This document shows, one piece after another, positions 1-45,136 of a DNA stretch of 64,000 nt. The notes under the pieces are model-generated. The model was not told the DNA's origin. It searched no databases and saw only the letters and a list, made by a program, of their open reading frames with translations. The position numbers and the translations under genes were made by a program. The stretch spans positions 1 through 64,000 of the forward strand of contig NIVC01003844.1 of NCBI GenBank assembly GCA_002269645.1, in the 5' to 3' direction. The stretch is from Macrostomum lignano (lineage: Eukaryota). Position 1 is the first letter of the stretch, and each line of letters starts with the position of its first letter.

Positions 1-1741
1 GGAAAAATGTTCTTGAGGTTTGGAAATCCCCCAAAAAAGTTAGCTGCATTCTAAAAATGTAACAAATATATTTGGATTCCTCAATTAGATTTTGCTAATC
101 CGTTTCATATAATCCTCTCTTTTACACCCTCATGCTGGCACCTCGTCAAGGACCTTTGGTAGGTAGACAAGATACGACTCTGTACTGAGTTTACCGACTC
201 TCTCATCTCATACATGTATTTATTGTAGGTACAGTGGTACACCCCAATAATCATGACGCAACTCATGCTCAAATTCACTCGATGCAGGACTTTTATTTTC
301 GAAAATATCAGTGCCGGGAGACCCCGACGCTAATGCGTTTGCTTGAGGGCCACTTGCAGAGATGCAGCTCAGACGTTGGAAAGAATTTTTTTTCTATTAA
401 AGTACGAAAAATTGGCAATGCGACCAGTAACTTCCCCTTCGCCTAACCATAAGACAGACGGGTGGGATTTTTCATTCACTCTGCCAAGCTAAAAAATCTT
501 TCTCTATGGGTTTTTCACGACAGACGTTCTTGATCGACGAATAGAACCCACGTCTCCTTCATCCGTGAATGCAACACACTATTAATGCTACGATATTTTC
601 TTACACAAAATCCCACAGTGAAAGATAAACAAAATTAAACAAGTTTCAGAGGAGAGACTGTTCGGAAAGAGAATAAGGGCCCGTTCTATAAAGCCATCGT
701 AAGATAAGATCGTTCTTAGCTACCATCTCCGCAGTGTAAAAGTTCCGGCGTACGATCCAACTTACGCAACGACAGCTTTATAGCTACGCCCCCTAAATGT
801 TTGTGTAGTGAGTGTGTATTTTTACTTAATTCAATGAAAAAACAATGGAGTTTCTGCGAACTGAGTTGGAAATTACTATAATAGTAATGGTATTGCGCAA
901 CAGAATTAAGAACTGTATGACAACGGGAATTCTGCTTAAATTGAACACAATAGGAAAATTGAAGTTATTAAGCGCTGAGGCCTCTTAACTCGCCATTTAT
1001 TTTTTTAATCCAAGTACTAAGTCACTAATTGTCTCACTGCCAAATGATCTTTCCTGTTTTTTCTGATATCCCCAACTCAACTAACTCAGTTTGGGATAGA
1101 ATTTCGGGATACTCCAAAACGCTTGTATTTGGAATCGTGTACAAGCGTATTCTAGCGAGAAAACCAGAGAACACGAGCGAAAGAGTGAAGAAATTTGGGG
1201 GAAATCGTAGTGAATTTATAGGCACAGTGCGGAGGTGAGGAGAGTGTGCGCGGGGCAGACAGCCTAACAAATTATAGTTTAATTTTTTAAACAGTTTGAG
1301 TTCCCGTTGCCGTTTAGGACCCGAGAACCGGCAGGATGTCTCAGTTGGTCTGTAAATGAGAGTTGAGTTGTTCATCGGCATGCAATAGGGAATCGAGGAA
1401 CAGGAGGTAGCATCTACACAGCATTTGCTACTTGGGTGGTAAAGACTAAACTGATTTCAAACGAGTGGGCATGCACTCTTCGCACATCTCATTGAGTTTC
1501 TATCGTCAGTCATATGAAGTCGCTCATGATTGTAATTTGCACTACCCAGTGCCAATAAATTCTGTTAGAAAAAAAACAAATTAAGCTAACGACCATAATC
1601 GGAGTTTTGGGCCAAGAGTGCCAGACCTTGTCGCAAATTGTAAACAGGAGAAAAGCTAAATGATTCTAAATGATGAAGAGAATCTTACATGGCAGCGCCG
1701 CGCGAAAAATCAAGACGAACAGCACCATCGCAATGACGCCA

Positions 1742-2319
1742 TTATTCCAGCGTCAAGTCCGGCCTTGAACTGCCACGGCAGCTGCGCCCTGTCAAAACTC
1801 TCTGTATGCTCTCAGTAGAATTCCAGCAGTTGCTGCAGAGCCAGTTGTAGTCTTTACCACTCGCCTCCAGCAGCTGCATCAGCGTGACGTCAGTGTTTTT
1901 GATCTTTACTGGCCTGACAACCCGGAAGTTAGGAGGCAGATTCTTGCCGATCTTCACAATGCGGCTGCCCTTTTCGCCACCGATGCGGTGCAGCTCCTCC
2001 ATGTGATCCGGCGCTACGCCTGTTCGTAAATGGTTCAGTAATTGTTGCAGAACGAGGATATATTTGTAAGTTCTATCCACTATACTACTATGTATTATGT
2101 CAATTATCACAGTTGCAACAGTCAAGCACTTTTAGAGGCCACAATGGGCAGCACTCACCCTTTTCGATCAGGTATTTTTGGCCATCGGCTGTGGTGACGC
2201 ACGCACCCCTCATGAGGAACTTTGTGGCCGGACGCTTGGTCCGGTCGCTTGGTATTGAGTGGTCGCTCGACAACCACGAATTCAACGACTATCTTCTGCA
2301 GCTCGTCATGCGCGGTCAT
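1742..2319 (-). pseudogene. Copy A of a tandem family of small permuted papain-like (NlpC/P60, LRAT-like) proteins; exons 2319-2159 and 2019-1742; 1-nt insertion just after the His motif
   Basis: The phase-1 intron AAGG|GTGAGT...TACGAACAG|GC joins MTAHDELQKIVVEFVVVERPL...PHEGC(fs)VVTTADGQKYLIEKG to VAPDHMEELH...GKDYNWLCSNCWNST. His followed by Y-x4-NC is the permuted catalytic order. There is an extra base near 2199 relative to copy B. Confidence 0.6.
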
Positions 2320-3205
2320 AATTGCGAGGAATTTGTATTGTTTCTTTACTTTCTGCTGCTGTAGTATGGAGCTGTGAAAGTAGCCGAGCGCGCTCCTAAA
2401 CTGGTTAATTTAACAAGCCATTTATCATTAGGTTTACTCTCTAATAACAAGGAACTTACTCATCGACTGGTGTCCGCTGCAGACCAAGCACCCTGGCATT
2501 ACTGTACAGTTACATTGCGCACTTCAATACGCGCGCGGGATTGTACACTGTCCAAAATGTACTTGTCTGGGCTTGAATGTAATTTCAGCTAGTATGAATT
2601 GTACACTCACTGTTCAAAACGTAGGAGAAGGTGGAACTTCACTTCTTTCTTTTTTTCTTGTTTTCTTAGCATATGGTATACAGTGCAATGCCTAATCTTC
2701 ATCTGCAATCTACATGTATAACCTAAAACTGTGCTAAATCCGAATTTTTTCGGCCTTGCGTGGAATTGACGCTACTGGCTTAAGACATTTTCTTAATACA
2801 TTTTCGACGCATGAAAAAGTTTTTTATCGTTGGTAAATGGAGCCTCTGCATAGTGTACTCATATCTCATTGGCTCAAAGCTTTAGATTTGTTTTTAAGCG
2901 TTCTTCGGTTGCAGCATCATTTGCCTTTCTAAAACATATTCTTATATAGCAATACTGCCAAATAAAGTGCAATAAAGCCTTTTGAAACACTTTTTTTGCT
3001 CATGCTTAGTCTTTACTGACGTAGTAGCGCCGCTTCTTAATAATTTTGTTTATTCTTAAGGTATGGATAAATAAGAGGGAAACAGATAATCGCAGGACAG
3101 GGCTCGCACAAATTTGAGTGACACCTGCATTAGTACTGCAGTTTTATTAAACTAAAGCGGCAAAGAACCATTCATTTTAATAAGCTTGCCTGGGGACCGC
3201 ATTAA

Positions 3206-3560
3206 AGGGCCCTGTCAACTCATAAAGTGGAGCCCGAGTAACCTATGCACACAAATGATACAGTATGTCATTCTGCTCACAATGACACTAGGAAGCTAGT
3301 TTTGGCAAAATAGCGACGAAAATTTGACTTGGGATAGGGTAAAACAAGCAAAAGCTGATAATAGTGACTCTACTTTATGAGCTTAAGTTGACATAATAGT
3401 AAATAGTTCCTTAATTATCCCCTTGCTTATTCTTCCAAGTCCAATTTTGTCGCTTTTTGCCAAACCCAGCTTCCTAGTGTCATTGTGAGCTGAATGGCAT
3501 ATCATTTGTGTGCATAGGTTACTCGGGCTCCACTTTATGAGCTTAAGCTGACAGGCCCCT
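3206..3560. mobile_element. MITE with about 130-bp imperfect TIRs and TTAA target duplication (Kolobok/T2-type termini)
   Basis: TTAA (3202-3205) + AGGGCCCTGTC...GACAGGCCCCT + TTAA (3561-3564); long inverted arms; no ORF. Confidence 0.8.
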
Positions 3561-4278
3561 TTAAACCGATGGCGACTGTTGGGAAAAGTTTGCTTTCATT
3601 CAAGTGACGAAAATTTGCAACAAAACACTGGGATTTCCCCTTCAATTTACTAACCAAAATCTTAACTTTTATAAATTTTCGCACCTGTGCGGACTGTATG
3701 TTGCGGATTTTCGACACGATTGAAACGTGTTTAAATATCTGTTTGTTTATGGTTCTTCCTCCGTAGACAGTTACCCCAGTTTAATTATCGTATAAGAACA
3801 AGTATAAATAGAAAAACGTACAGATTTGGGAGCTGACTAAAAAATGTCCAAGGGATTTTGGTCACAGCACAATTGCGTAATCAGACAACATTCAGAGACA
3901 AAAAAGGAATCCCTCGAGTATGAGTGGGCCGAATGTATTCTTAACGATGATATAACTTGGATACAAATCCTATATACTAAAATTGAATCTATGCTAGTAG
4001 TGACAAAAACGAGGGTTTTCAGTTTAAAGTAAGTTAAACAGCTTTGTTTAAACAGTTAGAGTTCCCGCAGCCGTTTAGGACCCGATCGAGAAGCCGGCAG
4101 AGTCCCGATGTCTCACCGGCGCTGTAAATGAGAGTTGAAGTTGTTCAGCGGCATGCAATTGGGAATCGAGAAACAGGGGATACCGTCTACAGAACATTTG
4201 CTGCCTTATTCACATCACTCACTCTCCCGAACTTCTTCGTCAGCCAGTGGGCACACTGTGCAGCTCTTGGGTCGGCTC

Positions 4279-4989
4279 TCATGAATGACTAATTGCACTA
4301 AGCCCCATTGACAAAATTCGTAAGAAAGCCAACCTTGGGGACTTTGAGAATGATGCAAGCACTTCTCTGGCCAAATTCGACATTTTGTGACTGTGAAATC
4401 TTACCGCGAAAAAGCTGAGCAACCCGGCCATAATGAATTTAACTGCACCAATTCCGGCCTGTGACTGCCACGACAACTGCGACTCCCCTGTCACAACTCT
4501 CTTCATGCTCTCAGTAGCATTCCAGCAGTTGCTACAGAGACTGCTGTAGACTTCTCCGCTCGCCTCCAGCAGCTGCATCAGCGTGACGTCAGTGCGTTTG
4601 ATCTTTATTGGTTTGACAATCCGGAAATTAAGAGGCAGCTCCTTGCCTATCTTGACAATGCGGCTGCCCTTTTCGCCACCGATGCGGTGCAGCTCCTCCA
4701 TGTGGTCCGGCGCTACGCCTGTTCGTCAGTGTTTTGTTAAATTTTTAAAAACCAAGATAATTTGGACAGTTTTATCCATTATTTATTTATTTATCACAGT
4801 TGCAACAGTCAAGCAGTTTAGAGGCCACAATATGCAGCACTCACCCTTTTCGATCAGGTACTTTTGACCATCGGCGGTGGTGACCACGCACCCCTCATGA
4901 GGAAATTTGTAGCCGGACGTTTTGTCCGATCGCTTGGTACTGAGTGGTCGCTCGACAACCACGAATTCAACGACTATCTTCTGCAGCTC
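4279..4989 (-). pseudogene. Copy B of the permuted papain-like family; exons about 4989-4845 and 4718-4279; start codon region lost
   Basis: Same intron position and phase as copy A. Reads ELQKIVVEF...FPHEGCVVTTADGQKYLIEKG|VAPDHMEE...GEVYSSLCSNCWNATE followed by hydrophobic IGAVKFIMAGLLSFFAV. The 5' side is fused to copy C exon 2. Confidence 0.6.
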
Positions 4990-5453
4990 CAAAATATAAG
5001 CAATTGCATCAGAGAGATGTTGGTGTTTGACATTTTTTTCTGCGACGACCTCGAAGCCAGAAGGCAGCCTTTTACCGATGTCTACGATGCGTATTTCACC
5101 AATGCGATGCAACTCTTTCATTTGGTCCGGCGCTACGCCTGTTCGTTAATGATTCATTAAATTTTATAAAAATAGTTTGTTTTAGATTTAGTTGGTTCCT
5201 ATCAGTAATAGCAACAAAAATAGGCTGACACTCAGTTAAAAAATTCTGCGTCACAGGGCGCATCTCAGAGCCAGGGCGCGAACGTAGTCCGGGCCACCAG
5301 GGACCGTAGCCTGGTGTGGTCCAGCGCGGCGCTCTTACATGCCCGCGGACCAGACTCAATTCCAAATGCAGTAGTCACAAGGAATGTATTGTTAGGCCTA
5401 AATTTGAATCTCGGCTTGGCTGTGTTCGTGCAATTAATGTCTAGACGTTCAAC

Positions 5454-5535
5454 TCCCAAGGCCCAGTGAAGTGTACATTCCTAACGATAAATAAAGTTAG
5501 AGCCTCTCTACACTCCTGTTTGAGTGTGTGCCTGG
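5454..5535 (+). repeat. Dispersed repeat of about 80 bp; second copy inverted at 54783-54863
   Basis: CCCAAGG-C-CAGTGAAGTGTACAT-CCTAACGATAAATAAAGTTAG...TACACTCCTGT-TGAGTGTGTGCCTG is shared by both sites. Confidence 0.75.
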
Positions 5536-5744
5536 ACGTCTGACATCGACGTACGACGTAGTTCGTCAGGGCGCCTGTCGGAGTGTGACAGGGCGCCCAA
5601 GTTTCAGCCTCTAATAAAAAGTCCGTCAGCGCCTCCGCGTAAAATTTTTAATTTGATGTCGCCCGGCCCACAGAGCCCGATGGACTTCTCAGTGTTGATC
5701 ACAAGCCCGACAATCGACTCTACAGCGACCAGTCGGTCGACCAG

Positions 5745-5810
5745 TCAGCAAACAGTTGAGGACAGCAGGGCGAGATCGTCGGCGTAGCCTAACAGGCTGA
5801 GCCGTCTCCG
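5745..5810 (-). mobile_element. Tiny LINE reverse-transcriptase remnant inside the expanded intron of copy C
   Basis: Translates LLGYADDLALLSS (RT catalytic motif) only. Confidence 0.35.
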
Positions 5811-7348
5811 GTTGGCGTCGACCCACTCTTTGCCGCAGCAGAAAGCCGCATTGGTCGGAGAGAGCAGTCCGCAGCACCCAGTCAAGCAGCAGAACAAGAG
5901 GAACGGCACGAACTTATTACTTTGGGTTGCGGCATTTACTTGCACCGATATCCAAACAAGTTAAGACGAATATTATCAATAATAATAATTATCATCCTTA
6001 CAGTTACTATATTCAAGCAATTTAGAGATTAAATTTTGCAGTGGCTTTTACTCACCCTCTTCGAACAGGTACTTTTCGCCGTCCGAGGTGGTGACCACAA
6101 ATCCTTTATAATGACCTTTGTAGCCGGACATTGGGTCCGGTTCGGGAGTTGTTCCTCCCTGCCTGGCAGATTACAGAAAATATGATCGGAACTTATAATA
6201 ATCGGAATCTAAAAATAGTTCGCCAAATAAATTATGTCAAAATAATCACAGTTGCTACATTCAAGCAATCTAGAGATTAAAATTTTGCTGTAGCTCTTAC
6301 CCTCTTCGATACTTGGCCATCCATACTTATAATGATCTTTGTAGCCGTACATTGGGCGAGGGAAATGATGCTCCTGCCAATACCGGTAATTATCATAGAA
6401 ACCTAAAAATGGTTGGCCAGATAAATGTGGTTCATCCCGTTTATGCTCTGAAGGCTTAACGGACGCAATTTTAACGACTGTCTTCTGTAGCTCGGCAGAC
6501 ATGGCCATAATTATTCCGAGTAAAAATACTAGAGCCCTAGGAGTAAGTGATCGCGCTTGTAAACTGGTTGATTTAACAAGCCATTTATCCTTAGCTTTAC
6601 TGCCTAATAATATGATACTTACTCATCGAGTAACGCGTACTGCAACCCACGTCACTCTTGCGTTACTGCTCACAATGGGATGTACAATTGCTGTACGTGG
6701 GCAATCTTCAATACGTGCGCGGGACCGTACTGTCCAGAAGTGAACTCGATGAAGTGTTTGGGCTTGGATGCTGAGGGCTCAGTGCACACGTAAATGCCAA
6801 GTGCACGGTGTAAAATACTCATAGATGCATTGACGTACACTCACTGTCCAAAAGGTAGCAAAAGTGGAAGTTCATTTTTTTCGTTATTCTTGTTTTCTCA
6901 GTATCTGGTACAGTGCAACATCGAATTTTCGTCTAATGCGAGAGTCGCACACGTTTCGTCTTCGCTGCTCAGTCTCACAGGCAGCTATGCAAGATGTTGC
7001 GATAAAAATTGCTGCCTTGCTCAAACAAAAACTGACACTACTAAAATAGCAAAGCGGTTCGGCAAATTCAGATCAAAGATGGCGGCGGCAAAATACAAAG
7101 AAAAATTTTCCGCTGATGCTGGTTCGCCTCGCTGCTGGGACTGGCAGCCACGAGCAAAAAAGATGCAATCACTGAATTCTCAGAAGCACCGCTTTCGCCT
7201 AAAATCTACCCCATTCCGGCTGCTCAATCGATGCAGCGATACCAATCGTTTCATCATTATTTTTCAGCATAAATGCATCGATTCTTTCCTGAAATCCCCA
7301 GCTACAAACCAACTGAGAACAGCAGAGTCTCCAAAATATCCGCTCACA

Positions 7349-8360
7349 ATGTCGCACGGCACTGTCAACTCGCTTCTGTCGCTGTGTCTCTGCCTTCCTG
7401 CCTTCGGTCTCGCCCAAGAGTCAACGAGCAAAATAACGGTCTGGGATAGGTGGTTCGACAGTCTGAGCGAGTACTCGACTCTGCTGAGCATCTCCGTTCC
7501 CAGCAATGTCTTATGTCTGATGAAAGCCAGTCTGAGTACCGCGGACGCCGCTGACTTCTCGGAGGAGGACGGACTGTGCCGCCTCTACCGGTGCCGATGG
7601 GGGCCGTCCGGCTGCAGGAAGTGCCGATACGTCTCGCAGGGAGCGCGGCTGTGGGTGAGGCCAGACGGATGAAAATTCAGTAGCTGTGCTGCTGAGGTTT
7701 GGGTAGCTGGGCATTCCTGACCATTGCGGTCATTTCGCTCTCTCATTTCAGCTCAGACGGCCGACACATCTGGACCGAAAGTTCTGTTGGCGCACCTTCC
7801 AGCACCGCGTCGACGGTTCCGTGCGGTTCGATCGCAACTGGGCCGAGTACCAGGCCTCGTTTGGCCAGGACGAGCACCGCAACTTCTGGCTGGGCCTGGA
7901 CACCATCCACGCCGCCACCGAGGATGGACTGCGCCGAGTCCGCTGGGAGCTGAGAACGTGGCAGGACCAGCCGTTCTGGGCCGAGAACGAGCGCTTCCTA
8001 GTCGCCGGCTCCGACAAGCTGTACCGACTGCTGCTCGGACCGCTGGAATCGAGCCTCTCCTCGATGGGGCAGTGCAGCTTCACGGACATGAAGTTTCTCA
8101 ACAATCAAAGCTTCTCCACATTCGACATGGACAACGACAACAGCAGTGTCAACTGTGCGCGAGTGTACGACGGAGGCTGGTGGTTCAACAGTTGCGCCTG
8201 CTTCAACCCGAACGGTCTGTACTACCAGTACCCGGATGCGTACAACAAAAGTGCTACGGACAGCCAGGGGATCTACTACTTCTGGCCGGGAGCGCCCTAT
8301 CCGTTTCGCTATGAGCATTCAATGAAGGAGTTCGAGTGTCTGTTCACGGATTTTATTTAA
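7349..8360 (+). CDS. Secreted fibrinogen-related domain (FReD) protein, about 304 aa: signal peptide, Cys-rich PAN/apple-like region, FBG domain; exons 7349-7654 and 7752-8360
   Basis: Phase-0 intron TGG|GTGAGG...TTTCAG|CTC. Exon 2 reads WRTFQHRVDGSVRFDRNWAEYQASFG...FWLGLD...FSTFDMDND...NCA...GGWWFNSCACFNPNG. The N-terminus MSHGTVNSLLSLCLCLPAFGLAQ is hydrophobic. Confidence 0.9.
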
Positions 8361-9439
8361 TGAGCCACCTTGAGGAGATTTCGGTCGCTTATCATTTTTG
8401 ATGCATGAGCAGAACATTTTATCTTTGAAAAATCGGGCCTCTGCAGTGTACGCTCGTACTCGTATCTCAGTGACTGAAAACCTTCAAAATTTATTTTCGA
8501 TTGCAGCTTCACTTGCCTCTCTAAAATATATACTCTTGTAAGGCAATACTTCAGCCAAAAAATTATTGCATCCGCCAGCTTGTGCTTCAGTATCCGTGAA
8601 GACTGAGCAAGGGTAGCGTCAGCTCGAGACGGGATTGGGTTAGGAGGTGTTGTCTTTGCTGGTTCCACTGCTGTGTGAATACGACCAGATGATAGTTAAA
8701 TGTGTGATACTCTCGTATAACGATAAGCAAATCGATCAAGAGGTCCGCAGACCGGAGCTCAAAACCTTTATGTAGTTTTTTCTGCTCTTCGTACACGGAA
8801 GAAGCAAATGAGCCTGCTTACTTGTAATGACTATGATGAACTTGACTTGATAATTTAGAGTTTATTTTTGCGTGCATCGTGAACTGAGAAAATAAAGGTA
8901 AAACATAAACAATATACAATATAGCCATATTCGTATGACATGCAAACGGGTAGCAAAAATCAACTCATTCTTCGACCGCCGGGGTTCTTCATCGACCCCC
9001 AGTTGATTCTTCATCAACTTCATCGTCATCAGTGAACTCTTTCAGCATCAGTTGCAATGAGTGCAAACAGTAGTGCTATTAATATAAATATTACAACGAA
9101 ACGTTAATGTTACTTTTAAAACCACGAGAGCCAGAGAACCGTGATTCGAAAAGTATATTTTTAGTGTGTGCAGTGCCTCTATAGACAAAATAATTTATAC
9201 CGTGTTGGTCCATCAATAGTAGAAACGGTCTTAGATTAAAGAAATTGAGGTGAAGAAAAAAGTTATAATCTTAGATTAGAGAGTTTTCAATTGGTCAAAG
9301 ATGTTCATCATAGCAGCCTTTCTACCCATAGGAAATACCGGAGATGGCGAGTCACCCAAAACCACCTTTAAGAACGCATCTACGGACTCTCGAGACATCG
9401 GCATTCGCAGTCGGCTTCAATGTTGCATTATCCATCAGA

Positions 9440-9850
9440 TCACAGGTCAGGAGCAGCCGGGGTTGAGGCGACAGTCTGCAGCTGCGAAGCCCGGGAAACC
9501 GGAGGAGCTCGGCTCGACATCCGGGATCCGGAGTTGGCCGAGTAGCGGCTGCGGCGGCTCCTGTCCGAGCGGCAGAGCAGCGCGTCCACGAGCTCGTCTC
9601 GGAACTTTTTGCCGCTGAGCACGTACATGAAGAAGTTCATCGTGTGGTTGGAATACACCAGCACGTCGGTTGCTGCAGAGGCCAACTCTTGGCAAGCTGG
9701 AAACGGACTGTAGCTCGGCCAGTACGGAGCCGAGATGTACATTGACATGCTCGGCGTGATCAGCACAACGTACATCAGCGTCACCAGCAGCATCATGCGG
9801 GTCATGCTGCTGTTTGTGTCATCGGCCGACTGCTTTTGCTGCTGCTGCTG
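9440..9850 (-). pseudogene. Rhodopsin-class (peptide-receptor-like) GPCR, end of ICL3 through TM6, TM7 and C-tail, separated from its upstream part by a LINE
   Basis: MTRMMLLVTLMYVVLITPS (TM6); DVLVYSNHTMNFFMYVLSGKKFRDEL (TM7 and helix 8, NFxxY variant). Confidence 0.8.
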
Positions 9851-12800
9851 TTGTTGTTGTTGTTGTTTTGTGGTACGCGCCCAGGCAGAGCTAAGGGCAG
9901 TGTCTGGCCAGCGCTATCAACCCGAGGGGTCGGCGGAAATGCTGCTGATGTCTGTCGTGGGTCCTCCAAGAAGGCGGAGCCTGGTGCCGGCGAGAGCTGG
10001 GCAGTCAAGCCAGTGTTCCAGGTCATCGCAGGGATGGCCGCAGCGGTGACATGCTGGGTCGACGGCCGGGTCGACAATGCTGCGATACGCGTTGAAAAGA
10101 GTGCAGTGACCTGAGCGTAAGCGCGCAAGAAGCACCGCATCGGCACGGTTGGTGATGGAGTCCTCTTCCAATTGACGGTTGAGAAGCCGGTACGCGTGCC
10201 GGGTGCGCTCGTGGCGTATCGGGGGATCGAGGACGGATCTTCTGATGACGTTTTTGGCGCTGTGGATGCTGATCTGACTAGCGGGAGACACGAGCGTGGT
10301 GGCCTCTTTGGCTGCTTGGTCGGCCAGCTCGTTGCCAGGAATATTCTGGTGGCCCGGAACCCACTGCCAGGTGATTTCGGCAGATGCAGTAGGTAGTGCA
10401 GATCTGATTCTGGGGTTGCCGCTGGCCAGAGCGCGGAGCATAGATTGGCTGTCTGAGCAGATGTTGGTAGCCGCGGTGAGAGCAGCTTGGTTGATCCAGC
10501 CGATGGCGAGAGAGGCGGCGCGAAGCTCCTCTTCGAACGAGGATGTGGAGGGCGCGCCGCGCTGTTGAAGAGTCGCCAGGATGATAGGGTGGGCTGGGTC
10601 ACCGGTCGTGACGATGGCTGAGGCGCCGCCATTGGTCGTGCCGCCTGATGCCGAGCCGTCGCAGTAGATGGTGATCAGGCCTGGGAGGTGGCGGATAGTG
10701 TCGATGGCCGTGGCTGTGCGCGCGGGACCGGGTTCCGGCAACGCCATGTCGACACGCACGTCGGTAGAGAAAGGGTCCCAAGGCGGCGGACGAGCAGTGC
10801 AGATCATGGCGCGCGGCGTGACCGAGCTAGCAATGAGTGGCAGCAGGTCGGTGACGTGGTTCCGCCAACTGTTCCTGCGTAGCCTGTGCGCTGTGTTTCC
10901 AGTGGCGGCAATGCGGCACGGGTGAGAATCCGGGAGGCGCTGAGCTCTTTCGAAGGCCGTCAGGCATATAACATTGCTACCAGTGCGGACGGAGCAGATG
11001 CCAGCTTCCAGCCTAAGGGCCTCAACCGGAGTCGTGCGGTGTTGTCCTGTGACAATACGAAGGGCTGCGTTCTGCGCTCTCTCCAGCTGTTGAAACGCGG
11101 ATTCAGAGAGCCAAGGGTGCCAGGCCGGCGCAGCGAAGTTAATGATGCTAAGTTGCATGGCACGGTAAATGCGGAGCAGGAGTTTTTTGGACCATCCCCA
11201 TTCCTTGGAGGCCAGGCAGGCGAGGAGACGGCATCGGGAAGTGGTCCGATTGCACACGTGCTCCAGATGACTGCGGAAACTCAGAGTGCGGTCCAGTGTG
11301 AGGCCCAGCAGCCGAGGCGTTGGATTGTGCCGCAGGTTCCGGCCTTCGATAGAGATAGCCGGGGACCAGGCGGCTTCGCTGGTGTCCGTGGAGAAAAAGG
11401 CGGCCTCGCTTTTGTCTGGGTTTAGGACCATTTTGTGCTCATTGCTCCAGCGGGCCACGTTGTCGAGTGCTCTTTGCACAGTGCGTTGAGCCTCGAGCTT
11501 GTTGCGGTGGCGGCGCGGAGGGCGATGTCGTCGGCATACATGGAGATCTCTGCCGGCGGGTTGACCACGTCATTGACCGTGTCAATGAAAATAAGGAAGA
11601 GAAACGGAGCGATGACCGATCCTTGCGGGAGGCCCTGGCGCATGATAACCGGTGAGCTGCGAGCACCGTGGAGTTGCACGCGGGCAATGCGATGGCGCAA
11701 AAAGGCCGCAGTCCATTTGATAAAGACAAGAGGGACGCGTTTGCGTGCCATAACGGTGATGAGGCGCTCACGCCACACTTTGTCAAAGGCTTTACAAAAA
11801 TCAAGCAGAGCAATGATCGTGCGTTCAGATGGTTTGAGGTTCATCCCGTCGCTGATGTCTTGGGTGACTCTCAGGAGCTGATCCTCGCAGGAGTAGTTGG
11901 CCCGAAACCCCGCCTGGTTCGGGGAGATCAGCCGTGGCGCTCAGCCAGGTGGTGCAATCTAGTGACCAGGATGCGCTCGAGCAGCTTGACAATACAGATG
12001 TGAGGCTGATGGGGCGAAAGGCCGCGATGTCCCGAGCCGACTTTCCAGCCTTGAGGCAGGGAATAATAATCGCGGTGCGCCAGGATTGAGCGACGGCCGC
12101 GTGCTGGAAGGACCAGTTGAAGAGACTAAGCAGCTCTGCGCGGGCGAGCGGGCCAAGGGCCTTAATGAACCGAGCGTGACCTCGTCGGCGCCAGCAGCGC
12201 CGTTAGCACGCTGGTGTTGGATGGCTGAGTCCAGTTCCTGCTCGGTGATGGCGGCGTAACCGTCGTGGATCGAACCTGGGAGCGGAAGGGGAACCGAAGG
12301 ATGGCTTTGGCTTCTCGGATAGTAGCGCGATCCGAATGGGAAATGTGGTACCTGCTGACAGAGGCGTACTGCTTGGCAAAGGCGTTGGCTTTGTCTCTAG
12401 GGTCTGTTAACACTTTGTTGCCGACCTGGAGGCCTCATTAGGGCAGTTGGAGTCCGGAGTGCCGTTAAGGCTGCGGATGAACTTCCACGCCTTGTTCGAG
12501 TTGGGCTCTTCTCAAGATCGGTTATCGTGTCACGCCAAGCAGCCTCTTTCGTTGCCCTGGCAATTTTGAACGTTGGCGCAGGCGCTGAGCCAATCTTCTC
12601 TATTCTCGCCAACGGAGCGCCTGAGGCGGTTACGGAGCTTAATCGCCGCTTTGAGTTCAGGGTGAGCCAGGGACGCGGTCTGTGCGAGGTACGGACTTTG
12701 CCGATGCAAAGGTTTGCCGCTTGCATGACTATATCATTAAAGCGTTTGGCTCTGGCGTCAAAGGTAAGATGCTCTTTGTGAAGGGCTTTAAATTTGTCCT

Positions 12801-14465
12801 CGACGACCGTTTGGAAAGCATTCCAGTCGACCCCTTGTTTGCGCCATATGAGACGGCTTTGGGCCTTAGGCAAGGTCCTAACCTTGAGGTCAAGGCGGAT
12901 CACAATCGGCGTGTGATCACTGCCGAGGTCATCGGAGACTTGCCAGGTGCATTTGCTAGCCAGCTTTGAGGAGGCGAAGGACACATCCGGTGAGCTTTCG
13001 CCACCTGTGGCTTTATTGACTCTGGTGGGCGAGCCGTCGTTAAGGATTTCCAGTTGCGTGTCGATGGACCAGTCCAGGAGCGTGGAGCCTCGTTCGTCCT
13101 GGGGCTGTATAGGGTCCCAGGCCGGAGAGTGGCTGTTGAAGTCTCCTAGGATGATGCCCTGAGACGGAGTGCCCAGGTGATTCCAGTCCGGAAGCTGTCG
13201 ATCCTCGACGCAGGTGCGAACAGGTGGAGCATAGACGTTGGTGATGGTAATCCAGTTAGCGGTAGATATCTGGATGTCGACCGTCTGGATTTCCATGTCC
13301 GCTGTGGCCGTGGGTTGCGGGGACGAGCGGAAGGCCAGCTTGTCTCTGATGAGAAGCAGCAGACCTCCACCGCTGCCGTCGCCGCGGTCTTTGCGCACGG
13401 CGATGTACCCGTTGATCTTTGGCAGCTGCGTGCGGTTGGAGAGCTTCGTTTCTTGGACAGCTGCAATGTCGATATCGCTGTCGGAGAGGCGTTCGGCCAG
13501 CTCGGGCAGTTTGGAGGCGATTCCGTCGGCGTTCCACTGGAAGACGGAGGCTGTCGGCAAATTTAGTGTCGCGGGCGACCTTGTCCTGCAGGGGACGCGC
13601 GACGTAGCTGCCGAAGGGGCGGGAGCTCCTTGGGTGCGCGCTGTGCAAACTGGGCAGTCCCAAGGGCTGCGAGCCGCGGCATCCGCGGCGTTGCGATTAA
13701 GGCCGGTGCAGCACTTGTGGTAAGCGGCGCTGCAGGAGTTGCACTTGACAAACGCGACGCCGCGGCGAATGGCGGTCGAGCATTTAGCACAGTAGCGGCG
13801 CTGGGCGTCGCTTGGATCGTTCAGATCTCTGTCGGTAGTGGGATCAGCTTGTCTGCGGGTAAGAGCAGGGCGGCGGAAGATGGAGTGTGCGCCTGGAAGT
13901 TGGACCGCCTGCTGCCGATGCAGAGGGCAGAGCCAGCTGGGGGCGCCACGATACCGCGAGATGTGGCTGCAGTTGCTGGAGCGGTGGCAGGCCAGAGCGC
14001 AACCTTTGGCAGCGCAAGTGAGCGGAGTAGTGCCAGTGCGGATGGGCCCTGAGCAGCTGTGACAGCGCGTTGGCTGAGACATGCGGGGCTCGGGTGCCGG
14101 GAGGTCACGCAGGTGCGCAGCGGATGCCGAGTCCAATTCAAGGGGGCGGTGCACAGAGCAGCGCCACGGAGATCGGACAATCTCGGCGCGGTGCATACCG
14201 CTGCATTTCTTCTGACAGTGACAGCGCTCGAACATTCTGGGACCTCACATGGCAGGCTGTGCATGCCCGTGCGGATTGGGCCGTTGCATGAGTTGCAGGC
14301 TGGGCCGGGATTAGTTTCGATGTCCCGGCGAGCGTAGTGAGGGCGAGCGCAAAGAGGACGAGGCGGGACAGATAGACAGCAGCAAAACAACCGGTCTCCC
14401 TGCCAGCCGTGCCGAAGGCACGCGAGGGCAGATGGGTTGAAGACCACGACTTAGGAGCTTTGGTG
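9851..14465 (-). mobile_element. Ingi-like (I group) LINE, near full length: 2A-like peptide, three PHD-like fingers, APE endonuclease, RT, RNase H, C-terminal zinc finger, (CAA)n tail; several frameshifts
   Basis: 15-bp TSD TTGCTGCTGCTGCTG at 9836-9850 and 14466-14480. Motifs: DIETNPGP; QWNADG/QETKL/GDFN/SDH (APE); QGS and YADD (RT); YCDGS/EL/SDS/WVPGH/GNELAD (RNase H); CHRC...HWLDC. Confidence 0.9.
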
Positions 14466-14979: not shown

Positions 14980-15050
14980 AGGATCGCAGATAGGTTTAGT
15001 AGGCCTCTCATCTGTACCCGAAAGATTCGAGATTAAATCACCCCAGAATT
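14980..15050 (-). mobile_element. Continuation of the R2-like ORF beyond the RTE insertion
   Basis: Reads KFWGDLISNLSGTDERPTKPICDP, in frame with NNISVEEYT on the other side of the RTE element. Confidence 0.65.
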
Positions 15051-15063
15051 TAGTATATTCTTC

Positions 15064-18000
15064 TTCTTCTTCTTCTTCTTCCACCTTTTTTTCGCCTCCC
15101 GGCGTAGGTGGCACCCTGTGTCTCGGACGTTTCCTCTTCTTCTGTTACTCGCCGCATGCACTCTCTCGTGCCGTGCCATGTTGGTTGCTGACAGCCATCT
15201 CTTACAGTATCGACATTCTGCTCTCTTCCTTTTGTGGATCCTTGCTATCATTCTCGCCGCTTCGTCGTTCGTCTTCGGTCCTTCCATTGCATGGGGCTCC
15301 TCCGCGCACTTCTTCCTGTGTCTTGCGTAGTTAGTCTTACTGATCCACGTTTTACAGTCGTTACACTCTCTTCTTGTGCCTTCCGTCCTGCCTCCCGTGC
15401 ACCATTTCTCGTGATTCTTTCTTGTCGCTTCCGTTCTGAACTCGCTGTTGCATCTCTCGCATCTCATTCTTATGCCCGTATCGGTCTTGTGCATTCTTTT
15501 CTGGTGGATGGCTAAGCCTCCTCTCGATCTGCATACTTTTCCGCAGTTCTTTTCCCAACACCTGAAACCTGTCAGTTCGTTTTCATCCATTTGAGTGCTG
15601 TTGAGCTGGTTTTGTTCCTCTCGTCCTTCGTCGTCTCTTTCTGCACCTTTGCATCTCAGCCGTTCGATCTTTTCCCACTCGACGTCTCTTTTCCTGATGA
15701 TCTCTTTCCACTTGATCTTGTCGTTCGCGTATTGTCCTACCTTGAGTGGGTCGAGTTTTGTTTTCCGGACCAGCTTTTTCCAGTAGGTGATAATTGTAGT
15801 TCTTCTCTTCTTCGGTCTTCTTATTTTCTCTATCCTTTTATTCCATCCCATCACGCAGATCTTTGTGAGGCTGGTATCCGGTAGTCTTAGGACGTGACCC
15901 ATTCGTCTCCAGTGTGCGATCTCAATTTTTCTCTGGATACTTTTAATTCCAAGAGATCGTCTTACGTCCCACATGTTCACTTGCTTTTCTTCCATTTCAC
16001 GTAGAGGTTCCTTGGTTTTACTGCTCCAGATAAAGCGGTAGCATTTGTCTATTGTTCTTTGCAGTTGATTTACTTCGCCTTGCTTGAACGGTCTCGCCCC
16101 TGCGTTGAACGTCATCGTGCTTTCCACACATGCCTCTATCACTCTCGCCTGGGTTCGTTTACTCAATCTTGTTCTCCTGAGTCTTTTCTTGACTTTAGCC
16201 TATGCGTTTGTTGCTCTTTGCAGTCTCTGGTGGATGTCTTCTTTGCTGCCAAGCCATACACCCAACATCCGGATCTTATTACTTTCCTCTGTTCCCAAAA
16301 TTGCTGTCTCTTCTTTCTCATCGTTCGTTCTCTCTTCCAACCATCCATGACTTCCTTCACCGTCTTTGTACCTTCCTCGATCTCCTTCTTCTCGCCTATC
16401 ACTGTGGTGTCGTCTGCGAAAAGTGACCAGGTGATCCGTGTGGTGATTGATTCTTCCGTGAACTGGTAGTTTCTCTGTGGGGGCAGGTCATTGCGTGGTA
16501 GGTATGTCCATTCGATACCTATTTCCAGACCCTCGCTTGCTGCTTTGATTTTTCTTTCGGTCTCGGCTGCTCGCATGACCGCCTGGTGGTAGATATTGAA
16601 AAGCACTGGCGAGGTCGCACATCCTTCTCGCAGTCCTCTCTGGGGAAAGAATGTCTGGCTGTTCTCGTCCTCGGTGTGTATCTTGTAGGCGGTGTTTTCG
16701 TGCAGGTCTTTAAGTTTATCAATCATCTTCTCTGGCATCCCGTGGTGTGCCAACAGTTTCCATAATGCTGGCTTATTCACTCTTGGGTAGGCTTTTTCAG
16801 GTTTTTCCTCGTTGTTTTCGTCGTTTTCTTCACTTTCCTCGTTCTCCGTGTTTGCTCGTGCTTCCCTCATCAGTGTTGCGTCTTCTTGGAGTCTCAGGAT
16901 AATCTGGGTGGCGTCCATTGTCGATCTGTTACGCCTGAAGCCTGCTTGATTTTCGTCTAGGCACTCGGTTTCCTCCGCCGACTTGTTAATTCGGGTTGCG
17001 ATTATTCTCGCCAGTATTCTGCTTGTGATTGGAAGTAGGCATACTCCTCGGTAATTGTTCAGATTCTTTTTGTCACCCTTCTTATGCAGAGGGATTATTA
17101 GACCAAGTTTTTGGCTCTCTCTCCACTTCTTTGCTGGTTCTTCCCAGAGTCTCGTAATCTCGGTGAAACATTCTTCTTTTACGGTTTCGTTTGCCGCCCT
17201 GGTGTAGATTTGTCTAACTTCATCCTCTCCGGGTGCTCCATTCTTCATCTTGTTCAACTCTCTCTCGAATTCTGTCTTAGTGATGGGTTCGATCAGGGCT
17301 GTGTTTGCTATCCTTCGCACTTCTTCGGTCACTTGAGGCTTTTCAAGCGCGTCAATCCTGGTCATCATGGTCGTTGGGTCGTTCTCGAAGCGATCTTTCT
17401 GCACTAATTCGAGGTGTTCTTTGAAATCGCTTGCACTGAACAGATCTTTCCCCCTGCTTTGGTTTTGGTTTCCCATCTCCGTTATACCCATTTCTTTGAG
17501 GTTTTCGTACATCCCTGCGATATTTCCTTTCTCGCAATTTTCTTTGCACTTTTGAGCAAGTCTGTCCCACCAGTCCTCCTCCCACTGCGTAAGTTTCTCG
17601 TTCTTCTTCCTTTTCTCACGGAGTTCTTGCTTCTTTGTTTCCAGGTTTCTTCTGTCTTCTTCGCTTCGCGTTTCTAGCCATCTGCGGTTTGCTTCGTTTC
17701 TCTCCTTCAGTGCGTCTTTGATGCCTAAGTTAAGTACCCTTAGTTCACCTTCCTTCCCGGCAAGCCATGGGTTTGTTTGTCTTTTCTTGATTCCGCATAC
17801 GGCCTCTGCTGTCTTCACTAGGTTTGCCTCCATTGTTTCCCATTGGTTCTCTCTTGTTTTCTGGTACGTTTCTTTTGCGAATCTTTCTCGTATTTCAACT
17901 TCTCTGAGTTTTTCCCATTCGATCCTCTTCCTCTTTTGCTTCTTTATCGCTGTCGCCTTGTTCTTCTTGATGATCTTCTTGATTTGTTTCGTCAAGTTCG

Positions 18001-19188: not shown

Positions 19189-19201
19189 TAGTATATTCTT
19201 C

Positions 19202-44900: not shown

Positions 44901-45136
44901 CGTCCACGTGTCCATTATCGATTCGCTTGAATTCTACAAATTGTATTATTGTACCCATCGATCTCTCGACTCTCATTACTTCTGATTCATTTTAATTTCA
45001 ACTCAATGATGCCAAAGATAAAGCCATATATATTTCTAGTCTTGATAGGTGCTAGATTCAGCGTCTCTGTATCAAGTCTGGCGCTCCTTTACTATCTTTT
45101 ACCGCGGAAGCAGAGCAGCTCAGCGATAAATGAAAC

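What the first reader, a model, noticed from the sequence alone, without database searches (positions are those of the whole stretch)
1742..6508. Tandem family of uncharacterised permuted papain-like (His...NC) enzymes with a hydrophobic tail
Seen: three minus-strand paralogs share one phase-1 intron and encode about 150-190 aa with RPL...HEGCVVTTADG.KYLIEKG in exon 1 and G..Y..LCSNCW in exon 2, then a hydrophobic segment. Known: His before Y-x-x-x-x-NC is the circularly permuted NlpC/P60 order of LRAT/PLAAT/PPPDE-type acyltransferases and hydrolases, and PLAATs carry a C-terminal hydrophobic anchor. Inference: a locally expanding, fast-evolving lipid- or peptide-processing family beside a fibrinogen-domain gene, possibly defence or secretion related. 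The ORF track misses it because of splicing and frameshifts.
Basis: partly seen in the sequence, partly recalled or inferred. Interest (0 to 1): 0.75.

Follow-up and report, generated by a model that had tools for sequence, protein, structure and literature searches.

The report
Flatworm tandem permuted papain-like genes
This is a small tandem cluster of flatworm (Macrostomum lignano) genes for a previously undescribed family of about 167-residue, membrane-anchored proteins that most likely have the rearranged papain-type fold of lipid-modifying LRAT/PLAAT enzymes: a new enzyme family within a known superfamily, not a new kind of system.

Summary
The window is Macrostomum lignano DNA, 97-99.6% identical to three Mlig_3_7 contigs. 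The repeated minus-strand units are real, but there are two complete copies, not three. Copy C is only relics, and its truncated exon-2-like piece is fused in frame to B's exon 1.

Copy A carries about five frameshifting indels in this window. It is intact and annotated from RNA-seq in the three homeologous loci (Mlig004476 g1-g3, 167 aa). B has an open reading frame in all four locus versions but is annotated nowhere.

The family has no Pfam or PDB sequence match. A full HMMER scan found only other M. lignano paralogs, three shark proteins and a few metagenome proteins. All share RPL, H-x-G-x-V-x-T-T-x-x-G-x-x-Y-L-I-[E/H]-K-G and Y-x5-N-C.

An AlphaFold model (core pLDDT 80-94) puts His and Glu on a beta-hairpin and Cys at a helix N-terminus. 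Foldseek and hhalign point weakly but consistently to permuted NlpC/P60 proteins: Aichivirus 2A, a DUF4105/Lnb protein, PLAAT3. A-type proteins are tail-anchored.

The defence or secretion link has no support.

The parts
6509..6640 (-). Upstream/5'UTR segment of relic copy C, homologous to the segment upstream of copy A. Probably the promoter that would drive any C-B chimeric transcript.
   Evidence: Direct repeat D6, 6542-6629 vs 2379-2466, 83% identity. Sequence read.
6301..6508 (-). Relic exon E1a (ATG at 6508, phase-1 donor G|GTAAGA at 6301/6300). Exon-1 homologue that keeps ELQKxVV and ends ..YGWPSIEEG. The His and the beta-hairpin are lost.
6056..6154 (-). Relic exon E1b (..SGYKGHYKGFVVTTSDGEKYLFEEG, donor G|GTGAGT). 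Hairpin kept, catalytic His replaced by Tyr. It can be spliced in frame (99 nt, phase 1/1), but its use is unknown.
   Evidence: tblastn 54.5% identity to B residues 61-93. Frame test.
4845..5138 (-). Fusion exon. A truncated exon-2-like piece (5138..~4990, GVAPDQMKELHRIGEIRIVDIGKRLPSGFEVV.., no NC motif) is joined in frame to exon 1 of copy B (4989..4845). First ATG at 5121. His codon 4899-4897; Glu codon 4851-4849.
   Evidence: Open in frame in all four locus versions.
4719..4844 (-). Copy B intron 1 (phase 1, GTGAGT...GAACAG).
4405..4718 (-). Copy B exon 2 (VAPDHMEEL...LCSNCW...AGIGAVKFIMAGLLSFFA). Tyr codon 4548-4546, Asn 4530-4528, Cys 4527-4525. Donor GCG|GTAAGA.
   Evidence: Downstream of the donor, the read-through frame is broken by indels or a stop in L002 and L005.
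4113..4121 (-). Copy B predicted exon 3 (cag|CGC CGG TGA = Arg-Arg-stop), homologous to the annotated exon 3 of A-type genes.
   Evidence: Flanking homology in repeats D7/D8. A-type exon 3 proven in L001/L002.
3219..3541 (.). Inverted-repeat (MITE-like) element in the spacer between B and A. Not part of the genes.
   Evidence: Arms 3219-3260/3500-3541 100% complementary; arms 3264-3310/3455-3501 91%.
2320..2466 (-). Copy A 5'UTR/promoter-proximal segment. In the homeologous loci it lies inside the annotated transcript.
2159..2319 (-). Copy A exon 1 (MTAHDELQKIVVEFVVVERPLNTKRPDQASGHKVPHEGC..). His codon 2214-2212. A 1-base insertion at 2199 shifts the frame in this window only.
2020..2158 (-). 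Copy A intron 1 (phase 1 in the intact homeologs).
1689..2019 (-). Copy A exon 2. Tyr 1849-1847, Asn 1831-1829, Cys 1828-1826. Carries a 4-base and several 1-2-base indels relative to the intact homeologs.
1341..1349 (-). Copy A exon 3 (cag|ACC AAC TGA = Thr-Asn-stop), identical to the exon 3 used by annotated proteins PAA74250.1 and PAA74236.1.

Best explanation
The region is a tandem array in Macrostomum lignano: relic C, then copy B, then copy A, all on the minus strand. It belongs to a lineage-expanded, unnamed gene family. The intact product is about 167 aa and is annotated from A-type homeologs.

Its predicted layout is a cytosolic catalytic domain followed by a single C-terminal transmembrane helix, that is, a tail-anchored protein. 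The domain most likely has the circularly permuted NlpC/P60 papain fold of LRAT/PLAAT-like enzymes. In the 167-aa numbering, His36 opens the first strand of a beta-hairpin. Glu52, which is His in shark and metagenome relatives, lies near the end of the second strand, ahead of the conserved Lys-Gly. Tyr111 and Asn117-Cys118 lie further on, with Cys118 opening an alpha-helix.

Inferred mechanism, by analogy with PLAAT3/LRAT: the Cys thiolate is activated by His, which is oriented by Glu/His. It attacks an acyl ester (or amide) of a membrane lipid and forms an acyl-thioester enzyme. The acyl group is then released to water (phospholipase A1/2-like) or passed to an acceptor (acyltransferase). The tail anchor holds the domain at the membrane surface.

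What is shown: the gene structures, the tandem duplication, the conservation of the motifs, and RNA-seq-based annotation of A-type genes in three homeologous loci. What is predicted: the fold and the transmembrane segment. What is inferred only: catalysis and the lipid substrate.

In this window, copy A is frameshifted (true pseudogene or assembly error, undecided). Copy B is intact but has no transcript evidence, and would probably be expressed from C's promoter as a chimeric transcript if at all. C is a relic.
For: Organism and locus. Window 1-12000 is 98.4% identical to L001 (NIVC01000963.1). It is about 97-99.6% identical to L002 (NIVC01000964.1) and about 95-99% to L005 (NIVC01002014.1), both in several pieces. 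All are M. lignano Mlig_3_7 contigs with the same C-B-A order.

Gene models.
- PAA74250.1 and PAA74236.1 are reproduced exactly by three-exon GT-AG models in L001 and L002.
- That annotation is built from RNA-seq and transcriptome data (PMC5730564).
- A 167-aa form exists in two annotation sets: PAA61613.1 and UniProt A0A1I8I5L7, the latter named 'Membrane spanning protein'.

Family.
- A HMMER scan of 1.84 billion representatives found only M. lignano paralogs (E=1e-14 and 3e-5), a shark protein (E=4e-4; two further sharks hold cluster members), a Tara metagenome protein and one Logan contig protein.
- The alignment keeps RP, His, VTT..G..YLI[E/H]KG, Trp and G..Y.L..NC.
- A second M. lignano subfamily, 26-27% identical in the family alignment, has its intron at the same codon and phase and also forms a tandem array.

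Fold.
- AlphaFold with 17 sequences gave mean pLDDT 73, core 80-94. Strands span 63-71 (His64) and 76-81 (Glu80). A helix at 146-158 starts at Cys146, in P0001 numbering.
- Foldseek against the PDB: the best probability is Aichivirus 2A (0.51-0.66 for four of the six listed chains, 0.35-0.44 for the other two; TM 0.42-0.53 normalised to the target).
- Foldseek against BFVD: a Tupanvirus protein at E=7e-7, a Moumouvirus protein at E=3e-5 and a virophage DUF4105 protein at E=2.8e-3.
- DUF4105/Lnb is a permuted NlpC/P60 acyltransferase (PMC12994826).
- hhalign against a PLAAT3 alignment gave P=3.7e-4 with NC on NC and transmembrane segment on transmembrane segment. The extended alignment puts His on His23 and Glu on His35. 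Controls gave 0.019 or worse.
- Sub-threshold Pfam hits in two distant members are to LRAT and Peptidase_C97, over the hairpin-to-NC or NC stretch.
- A Cys/His/Glu triad occurs in the solved permuted enzyme BcPPNE (PMC3142127).

Tail anchor. Kyte-Doolittle 19-residue maxima are 2.2-2.4, with 7-12 residues left after the window, and there is no N-terminal hydrophobic segment.
Against: - No window-encoded protein reaches any Pfam threshold. No member matches a PDB sequence.
- No PDB structural match reaches E<=0.001. The Aichivirus match has E=0.3.
- The two strongest structural matches are giant-virus proteins of unknown function, whose fold class I could not check.
- hhalign probability is only 36%, and part of the score comes from the transmembrane segments. 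The core alone gives P=0.009.
- The model rests on 17 sequences, most of them from one species.
- I had no coordinates, so the geometry of the triad was not measured.
- Copy B's tail is only weakly hydrophobic (below 1.6).
- B-type protein is absent from a 15-billion-protein collection.
- No enzymatic or expression data exist for the family. Three papers' supplements held no entry, and two further papers had no supplementary files held as text.
Confidence: 0.65

Rival explanations
1. The domain is a permuted papain-fold isopeptidase of the PPPDE/DeSI type. On this reading it would be a membrane-anchored deubiquitinase, deSUMOylase or other peptide-bond hydrolase, not a lipid enzyme.
For: The H-x-G...G-x-x-Y-x-x-x-x-G and Y-x-L..NC pattern also resembles the PPPDE motifs (my own knowledge). 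Two distant members give sub-threshold Peptidase_C97 hits (E=0.08 and 0.14) over the NC region. PPPDE belongs to the same permuted cluster (PMC10318531).
Against: The Peptidase_C97 hits cover only about 36 residues around NC. The LRAT hit is better and longer (E=0.019, 62 residues). In PPPDE1 a Phe occupies the position of the third polar residue (PMC3142127), whereas this family keeps Glu/His there. Structural matches go to an H-box/NC protein and to DUF4105/Lnb, and no DeSI/PPPDE entry is among the 50 listed. The C-terminal transmembrane anchor and the Y-x5-NC spacing match PLAAT3.
Confidence: 0.12
2. The His...NC resemblance is superficial. On this reading the family is a small membrane protein with another fold or with no catalytic function, for example a structural or regulatory tail-anchored protein.
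For: All database similarities to permuted papain families are below the usual significance thresholds. The model has a shallow alignment. Viral H-box/NC 2A proteins show that this fold can serve functions other than that of a protease (bioRxiv 10.1101/2024.04.06.588386, abstract).
Against: His, Glu/His, Tyr and Asn-Cys are the best-conserved positions across flatworm, shark and metagenome members at 26-35% identity. Four independent weak signals (Pfam sub-threshold hits, hhalign, PDB Foldseek, BFVD Foldseek) all point to the same superfamily. Reversed and shuffled controls score at least 50-fold worse.
Confidence: 0.12
3. The three units in this particular window are non-functional. On this reading A is a true pseudogene, C is a relic and B is a promoter-less, unexpressed copy. 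The family's function would then be carried by the intact A-type genes of the homeologous loci and by the second subfamily.
For: A has about five frameshifting indels here but is intact in L001, L002 and L005. The first one leads to a stop right after the splice. B lacks the A/C-type upstream segment. B is not annotated in any of three Mlig_3_7 loci and is absent from protein collections. dN/dS is near 1.
Against: Relative to L001 the window has more indel events than substitutions (75 vs 67), mostly 1-base deletions, many of them beside a run of the same base. That pattern suggests assembly error. B's reading frame, splice sites and all motif residues are intact in 4 of 4 locus versions, although divergence is too low (0-3%) for that to prove constraint. 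The GenBank annotation excluded transcripts overlapping repeats, and the C-to-B intron holds a transposon fragment, so missing annotation is weak evidence.
Confidence: 0.3

Closest known systems
PLAAT/HRASLS and LRAT (Pfam PF04970, LRAT-like permuted NlpC/P60 acyltransferases/phospholipases)
   Same: His before Cys. His and the third residue sit on a Gly-containing beta-hairpin. Helix, then Gly, then Tyr-x5-Asn-Cys with identical Tyr-to-Cys spacing. Cys opens a helix. Size is about 160 aa, with a single C-terminal transmembrane anchor after a short linker. hhalign P=3.7e-4 with motifs in register.
   Different: The family does not reach the PF04970 threshold. The hairpin is two residues longer on each arm. 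The third residue is Glu in the flatworm proteins, against His in LRAT-like enzymes (CHH triad, PMC10318531). It has NCW/NCH rather than NCEHF, plus its own RPL motif and a conserved Trp. It contains three predicted strands between the hairpin and the helical part.
Picornavirus 2A H-box/NC proteins (Aichivirus A 2A, PDB 7zv1/7zv6)
   Same: Highest-probability PDB structural match (probability up to 0.66, TM 0.42-0.53 over about 125 columns). Same H...NC order. These are homologues of PLAAT3 (bioRxiv 10.1101/2024.04.06.588386).
   Different: Foldseek E-value is only 0.3 and identity 12-13%. They are viral polyprotein pieces without a tail anchor.
DUF4105/Lnb (permuted NlpC/P60 lipoprotein N-acyltransferase of Bacteroides) and its virophage homologue
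   Same: Foldseek match to the Yellowstone Lake virophage 5 DUF4105 protein at E=2.8e-3, probability 1.0. The family is a lipid-directed permuted NlpC/P60 with conserved His and Cys (PMC12994826).
   Different: These are large multi-domain proteins, mostly bacterial (853 aa in the virophage). There is no sequence-level match and the membrane topology differs.
YaeF/YiiX-like C92 enzymes (BcPPNE, PDB 3kw0; YiiX, 2if6)
   Same: Permuted order with a Cys/His/Glu triad. His-to-Glu spacing is 15 in BcPPNE and 16 here. They have an extra conserved Tyr and a hydrophobic, lipid-binding pocket (PMC3142127).
   Different: No Pfam or Foldseek hit to them. Tyr lies 27 residues before Cys in BcPPNE, against 7 here. 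They are soluble bacterial or poxviral proteins.
PPPDE/DeSI (Peptidase_C97, PF05903)
   Same: Permuted papain fold with similar H-x-G and Y..L..NC motifs. Sub-threshold Pfam hits in two members.
   Different: PPPDE1 has no polar third residue (Phe at that position; PMC3142127). These are soluble isopeptidases, and there was no structural match here.

Membership tests
Circularly permuted NlpC/P60 superfamily (PPNE) | Catalytic His and third polar residue precede the catalytic Cys in the sequence, and all are conserved across the family | tested here: met
   His64, Glu/His80 and Asn145-Cys146 (P0001 numbering) are conserved in flatworm, shark, Logan and Tara members at 26-35% identity. His is missing only from N-terminally truncated metagenome gene calls.
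Circularly permuted NlpC/P60 superfamily (PPNE) | Cys at the N-terminus of an alpha-helix; His and the third residue on adjacent beta-strands of the sheet | tested here: met
   AlphaFold model me3a7aee0355c has strands 63-71 and 76-81 and a helix at 146-158, with local pLDDT 80-94. This is a prediction only. No coordinates were available to measure distances.
Circularly permuted NlpC/P60 superfamily (PPNE) | Significant 3D similarity to a known permuted NlpC/P60 structure | tested here: inconclusive
   PDB: nothing at E<=0.001. The best probability is Aichivirus 2A (0.66, E=0.31, TM 0.53 on the target). BFVD: a DUF4105 protein at E=2.8e-3, probability 1.0. The query model carried about 60 residues of non-domain sequence, which lowers the scores.
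LRAT/PLAAT family (Pfam PF04970) | Score above the Pfam gathering threshold (24.3 bits) | tested here: not met
   No hit for the window proteins or for P0001/P0002. The best is 15.7 bits, E=0.019, in the distant member P0005.
LRAT/PLAAT family (Pfam PF04970) | Profile-profile homology with motifs in register | tested here: inconclusive
   hhalign P=3.7e-4, probability 36%, NC aligned to NC. Core alone gives P=0.009, with His on His23 and Glu on His35 in the extended alignment. Reversed controls gave 0.03, and the best of 30 shuffles gave 0.019.
LRAT/PLAAT family (Pfam PF04970) | C-terminal transmembrane anchor after the catalytic domain | tested here: met
   Kyte-Doolittle 19-residue maxima of 2.2-2.4, 7-12 residues from the C-terminus, in A-type proteins and in P0003. 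Copy B's tail is weaker, below 1.6.
LRAT/PLAAT family (Pfam PF04970) | Acyl-thioester intermediate; phospholipase A1/2 or acyltransferase activity | not testable with these tools
   Needs biochemistry.
PPPDE/DeSI (Pfam PF05903, Peptidase_C97) | Score above the Pfam gathering threshold (29.2 bits) | tested here: not met
   13.2 and 12.4 bits in P0004 and P0005 only, over the NC region.
YaeF/YiiX-like (Pfam PF05708, C92) | Sequence or structure match to the family | tested here: not met
   No Pfam hit at E<=10. No YiiX or BcPPNE entry among the 50 listed Foldseek PDB matches. Only the Cys/His/Glu triad type is shared.
Tail-anchored membrane proteins | Single transmembrane segment within about 30 residues of the C-terminus and no N-terminal signal sequence | tested here: met
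   A-type 167-aa proteins: transmembrane segment at about 141-160 of 167-170, hydrophilic N-terminus. The shark homologue instead has an N-terminal hydrophobic segment.

The most novel reading that the evidence does not exclude
The family may not be a diverged PLAAT. It could be an independent lineage of permuted NlpC/P60 lipid enzymes shared with giant viruses. Its best structural matches are Tupanvirus and Moumouvirus proteins of unknown function. It also has a patchy eukaryotic distribution: one flatworm genus, sharks and marine plankton contigs. That pattern would fit horizontal transfer to or from nucleocytoplasmic large DNA viruses. A tail-anchored, tandemly amplified, fast-changing flatworm version could act on organelle or pathogen membranes, in a PLAAT-like role of organelle clearance or antiviral restriction.
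Probability: 0.12. Interest if true: 0.65.

Novelty: new variant of a known kind. Interest (0 to 1): 0.42.

Why it matters
Permuted NlpC/P60 enzymes (LRAT, PLAAT1-5, Lnb, the T6SS effector Tox-Act1) remodel or destroy membranes. They matter in vitamin A metabolism, organelle clearance, virus entry and bacterial warfare.

A further eukaryotic family would extend the map of this superfamily. This one lies outside every Pfam model, has a Glu/His third residue and a tail anchor, and is amplified in tandem in a transgenesis-ready flatworm model. That gives a tractable system for asking what such enzymes do in an invertebrate.

For genome annotation there are two practical points. In the three Mlig_3_7 versions of this locus, only the A-type gene of the array is annotated. 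This window's copy of that gene may also be broken only by assembly errors.

Tried and rejected
- Pfam scan of the spliced B, corrected A and C-B pieces: no family. The only hit was a spurious DUF4379 match at E=0.02.
- phmmer/hmmsearch against PDB sequences: only chance hairpin matches such as the TM1112 cupin.
- First AlphaFold run with a 6-row, near-identical alignment: pLDDT 43, unusable.
- The word-indexed search with the family profile added only M. lignano paralogs.
- The search for related loci on viral and metagenome contigs: the alignment was too variable to seed, so no scan ran.
- P0006 and P0007 from the HMMER scan are bacterial DUF11/DUF7507 repeat proteins and were rejected as false positives.
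- Expression data for Mlig004476 and paralog IDs: absent from the main text of the paper library and from the supplements of three papers. Two further papers hold no text supplements.
- Constraint on B from homeolog comparison: divergence is 0-3% in coding and flanking DNA alike, so it is uninformative.
- A link to the neighbouring fibrinogen ORF: no evidence was found. The fibrinogen ORF is not among the called genes in L001.

Full report
**What the sequence is.** The window is eukaryotic. A protein search with the spliced middle copy returned only two proteins among 5.8 billion. [quoted passage not shown] Their loci in assembly Mlig_3_7 align with window 1-12000. L001 (NIVC01000963.1) aligns at 98.4% over one 12-kb stretch. 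L002 (NIVC01000964.1) aligns at about 97-99.6%, and a third locus, L005 (NIVC01002014.1), at about 95-99%, both in several pieces. So there are four versions of one locus, as expected for this hidden polyploid. The window is one of them, or another assembly of one.

**Checking the observation.** I read 1500-6800 on the minus strand and located the splice signals. The layout, 5' to 3' on the minus strand, is as follows.
- Relic copy C: an upstream segment homologous to the one before A (6542-6629 vs 2379-2466).
- Exon E1a, 6508..6301.
- A possible exon E1b, 6154..6056.
- An interval holding a reverse-transcriptase-like fragment (LLGYADDLALL, about 5745-5945).
- A fusion exon, 5138..4845. Here a truncated exon-2-like piece (GVAPDQMKELHRIGEIRIVDIGKRLPSGFEVV...) runs in frame into exon 1 of copy B (ELQKIVVEF...HEGCVVTTADGQKYLIEKG).
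- B intron 1, 4844..4719, phase 1.
- B exon 2, 4718..4405 (...LCSNCW...AGIGAVKFIMAGLLSFFA).
- B intron 2, then a 9-base exon 3 at 4121..4113 (RR-stop).
- A spacer of about 1.8 kb between B's exon 3 and A's ATG, with an inverted-repeat element at 3219-3541.
- Copy A: exon 1 at 2319..2159, intron 1, exon 2 at 2019..1689, intron 2, exon 3 at 1349..1341 (TN-stop).

The repeat finder recovers the duplicated units at a spacing of about 2.69 kb. tblastn finds no other copy in the window.
- There are two complete paralogs plus relics, not three paralogs.
- There is a third exon.
- B's long ORF tail is intron read-through. It is broken by indels or a stop in L002 and L005.
- The feature extends to 1341.

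**Transcript evidence.** The GenBank proteins PAA74250.1 (P0001) and PAA74236.1 (P0002) are reproduced residue for residue by three-exon GT-AG models in L001 and L002. This includes the phase-1 junction after LIEK and the mini-exon ACC AAC TGA. The Mlig_3_7 annotation was built from RNA-seq and a de novo transcriptome, not from ab initio prediction (PMC5730564). A-type splicing is therefore supported by transcripts, at homeologous loci. A complete 167-aa form is present in two annotation sets: PAA61613.1 and UniProt A0A1I8I5L7, the latter named 'Membrane spanning protein'.

Copy B is not annotated at any of the three loci. No B-type protein exists in the collection. That annotation dropped transcripts overlapping repeats, and the C-to-B interval contains a transposon fragment, so the absence is weak evidence. 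B lacks the upstream segment shared by A and C. If B is expressed, the likely transcript starts at C's promoter and splices 6301|5138, with or without E1b. Both variants are open in frame.

**State of the copies in this window.** Relative to the intact homeologs, copy A has several indels: +1 base at 2199 just after HEGC, a 4-base deletion at 1785, a 1-base deletion at 1741, and further small indels near 1709 and 1689. The first shifts the intron phase and gives a stop straight after the splice. Over 12 kb, however, the window differs from L001 by 75 indel events and only 67 substitutions. Most of the indels are 1-base deletions, many of them beside a run of the same base. That is the signature of long-read assembly error, not of natural polymorphism, so I cannot say whether A is a pseudogene here. 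B's reading frame, splice sites and motifs are intact in all four versions. Divergence among the versions is only 0-3% in coding and flanking DNA alike, so this does not prove selection.

**Rate of change.** A against B gives dS 0.13-0.16, dN 0.10-0.11 and dN/dS 0.64-0.85. Two A homeologs differ by 12 non-synonymous and 3 synonymous changes. Substitutions avoid the motif blocks, and the intron is more diverged (22%) than the silent sites. 'Fast-evolving' is plausible but rests on small counts.

**The family.** Neither Pfam nor PDB sequences match. A full HMMER scan of 1.84 billion cluster representatives, using a profile of the family, found eight proteins at E<=0.001. One of these is P0002 itself, which was part of the query profile.
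- Two are bacterial repeat proteins and are false positives.
- The rest are further M. lignano proteins (Mlig017153/000256/022102/015703/018103/012613 groups), a protein of the great white shark with cluster members in two other sharks, a Tara metagenome protein and a Logan contig protein.

All of them share RP(L), H-x-[GA]-x-V-x-T-T-x-x-G-x-x-Y-L-I-[E/H]-K-G, a Trp, and G-x-x-Y-x-L-x-x-N-C.

The second flatworm subfamily is 26-27% identical in the family alignment. It has its first intron in the same Gly codon and phase (GAGAAGG|GTGAGT), a third exon after the transmembrane segment, and three consecutive genes per contig. The gene structure is therefore old, and tandem amplification is a habit of the family.

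**Fold.** With 17 sequences AlphaFold gave a usable model, mean pLDDT 73 and 80-94 in the core. In P0001 numbering:
- a long first strand at 38-48;
- a hairpin at 63-71 and 76-81, with His64 at the start of its first strand and Glu80 next to last in its second;
- three more strands;
- a helix at 128-135;
- a helix at 146-158 that begins with Cys146.

This is the order and placement expected for a circularly permuted NlpC/P60 domain. In the 167-aa protein the residues are His36, Glu52, Tyr111, Asn117 and Cys118.

The database comparisons were as follows.
- Foldseek against the PDB found nothing at E<=0.001. The highest-probability match is Aichivirus A 2A, with probability up to 0.66 and TM 0.42-0.53 on the target. 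Kobuvirus 2A proteins carry the H-box/NC motif, and such 2A proteins are homologous to PLAAT3 (PMC4785127 and bioRxiv 10.1101/2024.04.06.588386).
- Foldseek against predicted viral structures gave three matches at probability 1.0: uncharacterised Tupanvirus (E=7e-7) and Moumouvirus (E=3e-5) proteins, and a virophage DUF4105 protein (E=2.8e-3).
- DUF4105/Lnb is a permuted NlpC/P60 lipoprotein N-acyltransferase (PMC12994826).
- An hhalign comparison with an alignment of PLAAT3 relatives gave P=3.7e-4, with NC on NC and the transmembrane segments aligned.
- Without the tail, P is 0.009. The extended alignment then puts His on PLAAT3 His23 and Glu on His35.
- Reversed alignments gave about 0.03, and 30 column shuffles gave 0.019 at best.
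- Sub-threshold Pfam hits in two distant members are to LRAT (E=0.019) and Peptidase_C97 (E about 0.1).

The Tyr-to-Cys spacing (Y-x5-N-C) equals that of PLAAT3. The hairpin is two residues longer on each arm, which keeps His and Glu facing each other (my reading). A Cys/His/Glu triad is known from the solved permuted enzyme BcPPNE. PPPDE1 has a Phe at the third position (PMC3142127), which argues for the lipid-enzyme branch over the PPPDE branch.

**Topology.** A-type proteins and the second subfamily have a strong hydrophobic segment 7-12 residues from the C-terminus and no N-terminal one. They would be tail-anchored, with the domain in the cytosol, like PLAATs. B's tail is weaker. The shark protein instead has an N-terminal signal-like segment.

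**Most likely mechanism.** The family is most likely a Cys-His-Glu/His thiol enzyme held at a membrane surface. It would form an acyl-thioester from a membrane lipid and either hydrolyse or transfer the acyl group. The fold assignment is predicted at about 0.75. The thiol-enzyme and lipid steps are inferences by analogy. Rivals are:
- a PPPDE-type isopeptidase;
- a non-catalytic or differently folded membrane protein;
- the possibility, not exclusive of the others, that the three units in this window are dead copies.

**Membership and novelty.** The family fails the Pfam thresholds of LRAT, Peptidase_C97 and C92. I therefore do not file it as a member of any of those. It behaves as a separate, unnamed family inside the permuted NlpC/P60 superfamily. 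No paper in the library links Macrostomum with LRAT, NlpC, PLAAT, HRASLS or PPPDE, and the gene ID appears in no main text. It is a new variant of a known kind and of moderate interest.

**Surroundings.** Upstream on the plus strand lies a Fibrinogen_C ORF (7821-8357, E=4e-32). It is not among the called genes in L001, and nothing ties it to the family. The rest of the window is transposons and satellites.

Noticed in passing
window 7821-8357 (+): Open reading frame with a Fibrinogen_C domain (PF00147, E=3.8e-32), divergent from relic copy C. It is not among the called genes of the homeologous locus L001. It may be one exon of a larger or unexpressed gene.
   Followed up: partly
window 5745-5945 (-): Short ORF with a reverse-transcriptase-like ...LLGYADDLALL... 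motif, lying between relic exon E1b and the fusion exon. Probably a non-LTR retrotransposon fragment inside the C-to-B intron. Pfam gave no hit for the 66-aa piece.
   Followed up: partly
window 3219-3541: Nested inverted repeat (arms 42 nt at 100% and 47 nt at 91% complementary) in the spacer between copies B and A. It looks like a MITE-type insertion and is present in the homeologous loci too.
   Followed up: no
window 1-12000 vs L001: 75 indel events against 67 substitutions, mostly 1-base deletions in the window, many beside a run of the same base. One of the two assemblies has a high indel error rate, so any frameshift in this window should be checked against reads.
   Followed up: yes
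window 9920-14235 and 15036-19242 (-): Non-LTR retrotransposon ORFs: RNase H, endonuclease-reverse transcriptase and RVT_1. They coincide with a G+C-rich, GC-skewed block (10-14 kb) and a strongly AT-skewed block (14-20 kb).
   Followed up: partly
window 32028-32828 (-) and 38386-41946 (-): DNA transposon ORFs: a DDE_Tnp_4 (Harbinger/PIF-type) transposase, and a 1187-aa hAT-type transposase (Dimer_Tnp_hAT, DUF4371). The hAT-type ORF overlaps a 48-bp x 19.5 tandem array at 40831-41764.
   Followed up: no
window 45136-49053; 58495-61068; 62021-64000: Large tandem arrays: 21 bp x 187 copies, 32 bp x 80 copies, and 107 bp x 18.5 copies running off the end of the window. Several long ORFs at 45.5-49.1 kb lie on the 21-bp array (a multiple of 3), so they are probably artefacts of the repeat or a repeat protein.
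   Followed up: no
L006 (NIVC01001413.1) 236-2729 and 8001-11330: A second subfamily (Mlig015703g1, Mlig017153g1, plus Mlig011546g2 on the same contig) forms its own tandem array. It has the same phase-1 intron in the Gly codon after LIEK and a last exon after the transmembrane segment.
   Followed up: yes
P0008/P0013/P0014 (shark proteins XP_041044995.1, XP_078072585.1, XP_078396344.1): Shark homologues carry an N-terminal hydrophobic, signal-like segment instead of a C-terminal anchor, and have His as the third residue (LIHKG). The family's distribution (one flatworm genus, sharks, marine metagenome contigs) is oddly patchy.
   Followed up: partly
window 6794-7672 (+): 292-aa ORF between relic copy C and the fibrinogen ORF with no Pfam match. 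It overlaps the region upstream of C on the opposite strand and is probably not coding.
   Followed up: partly
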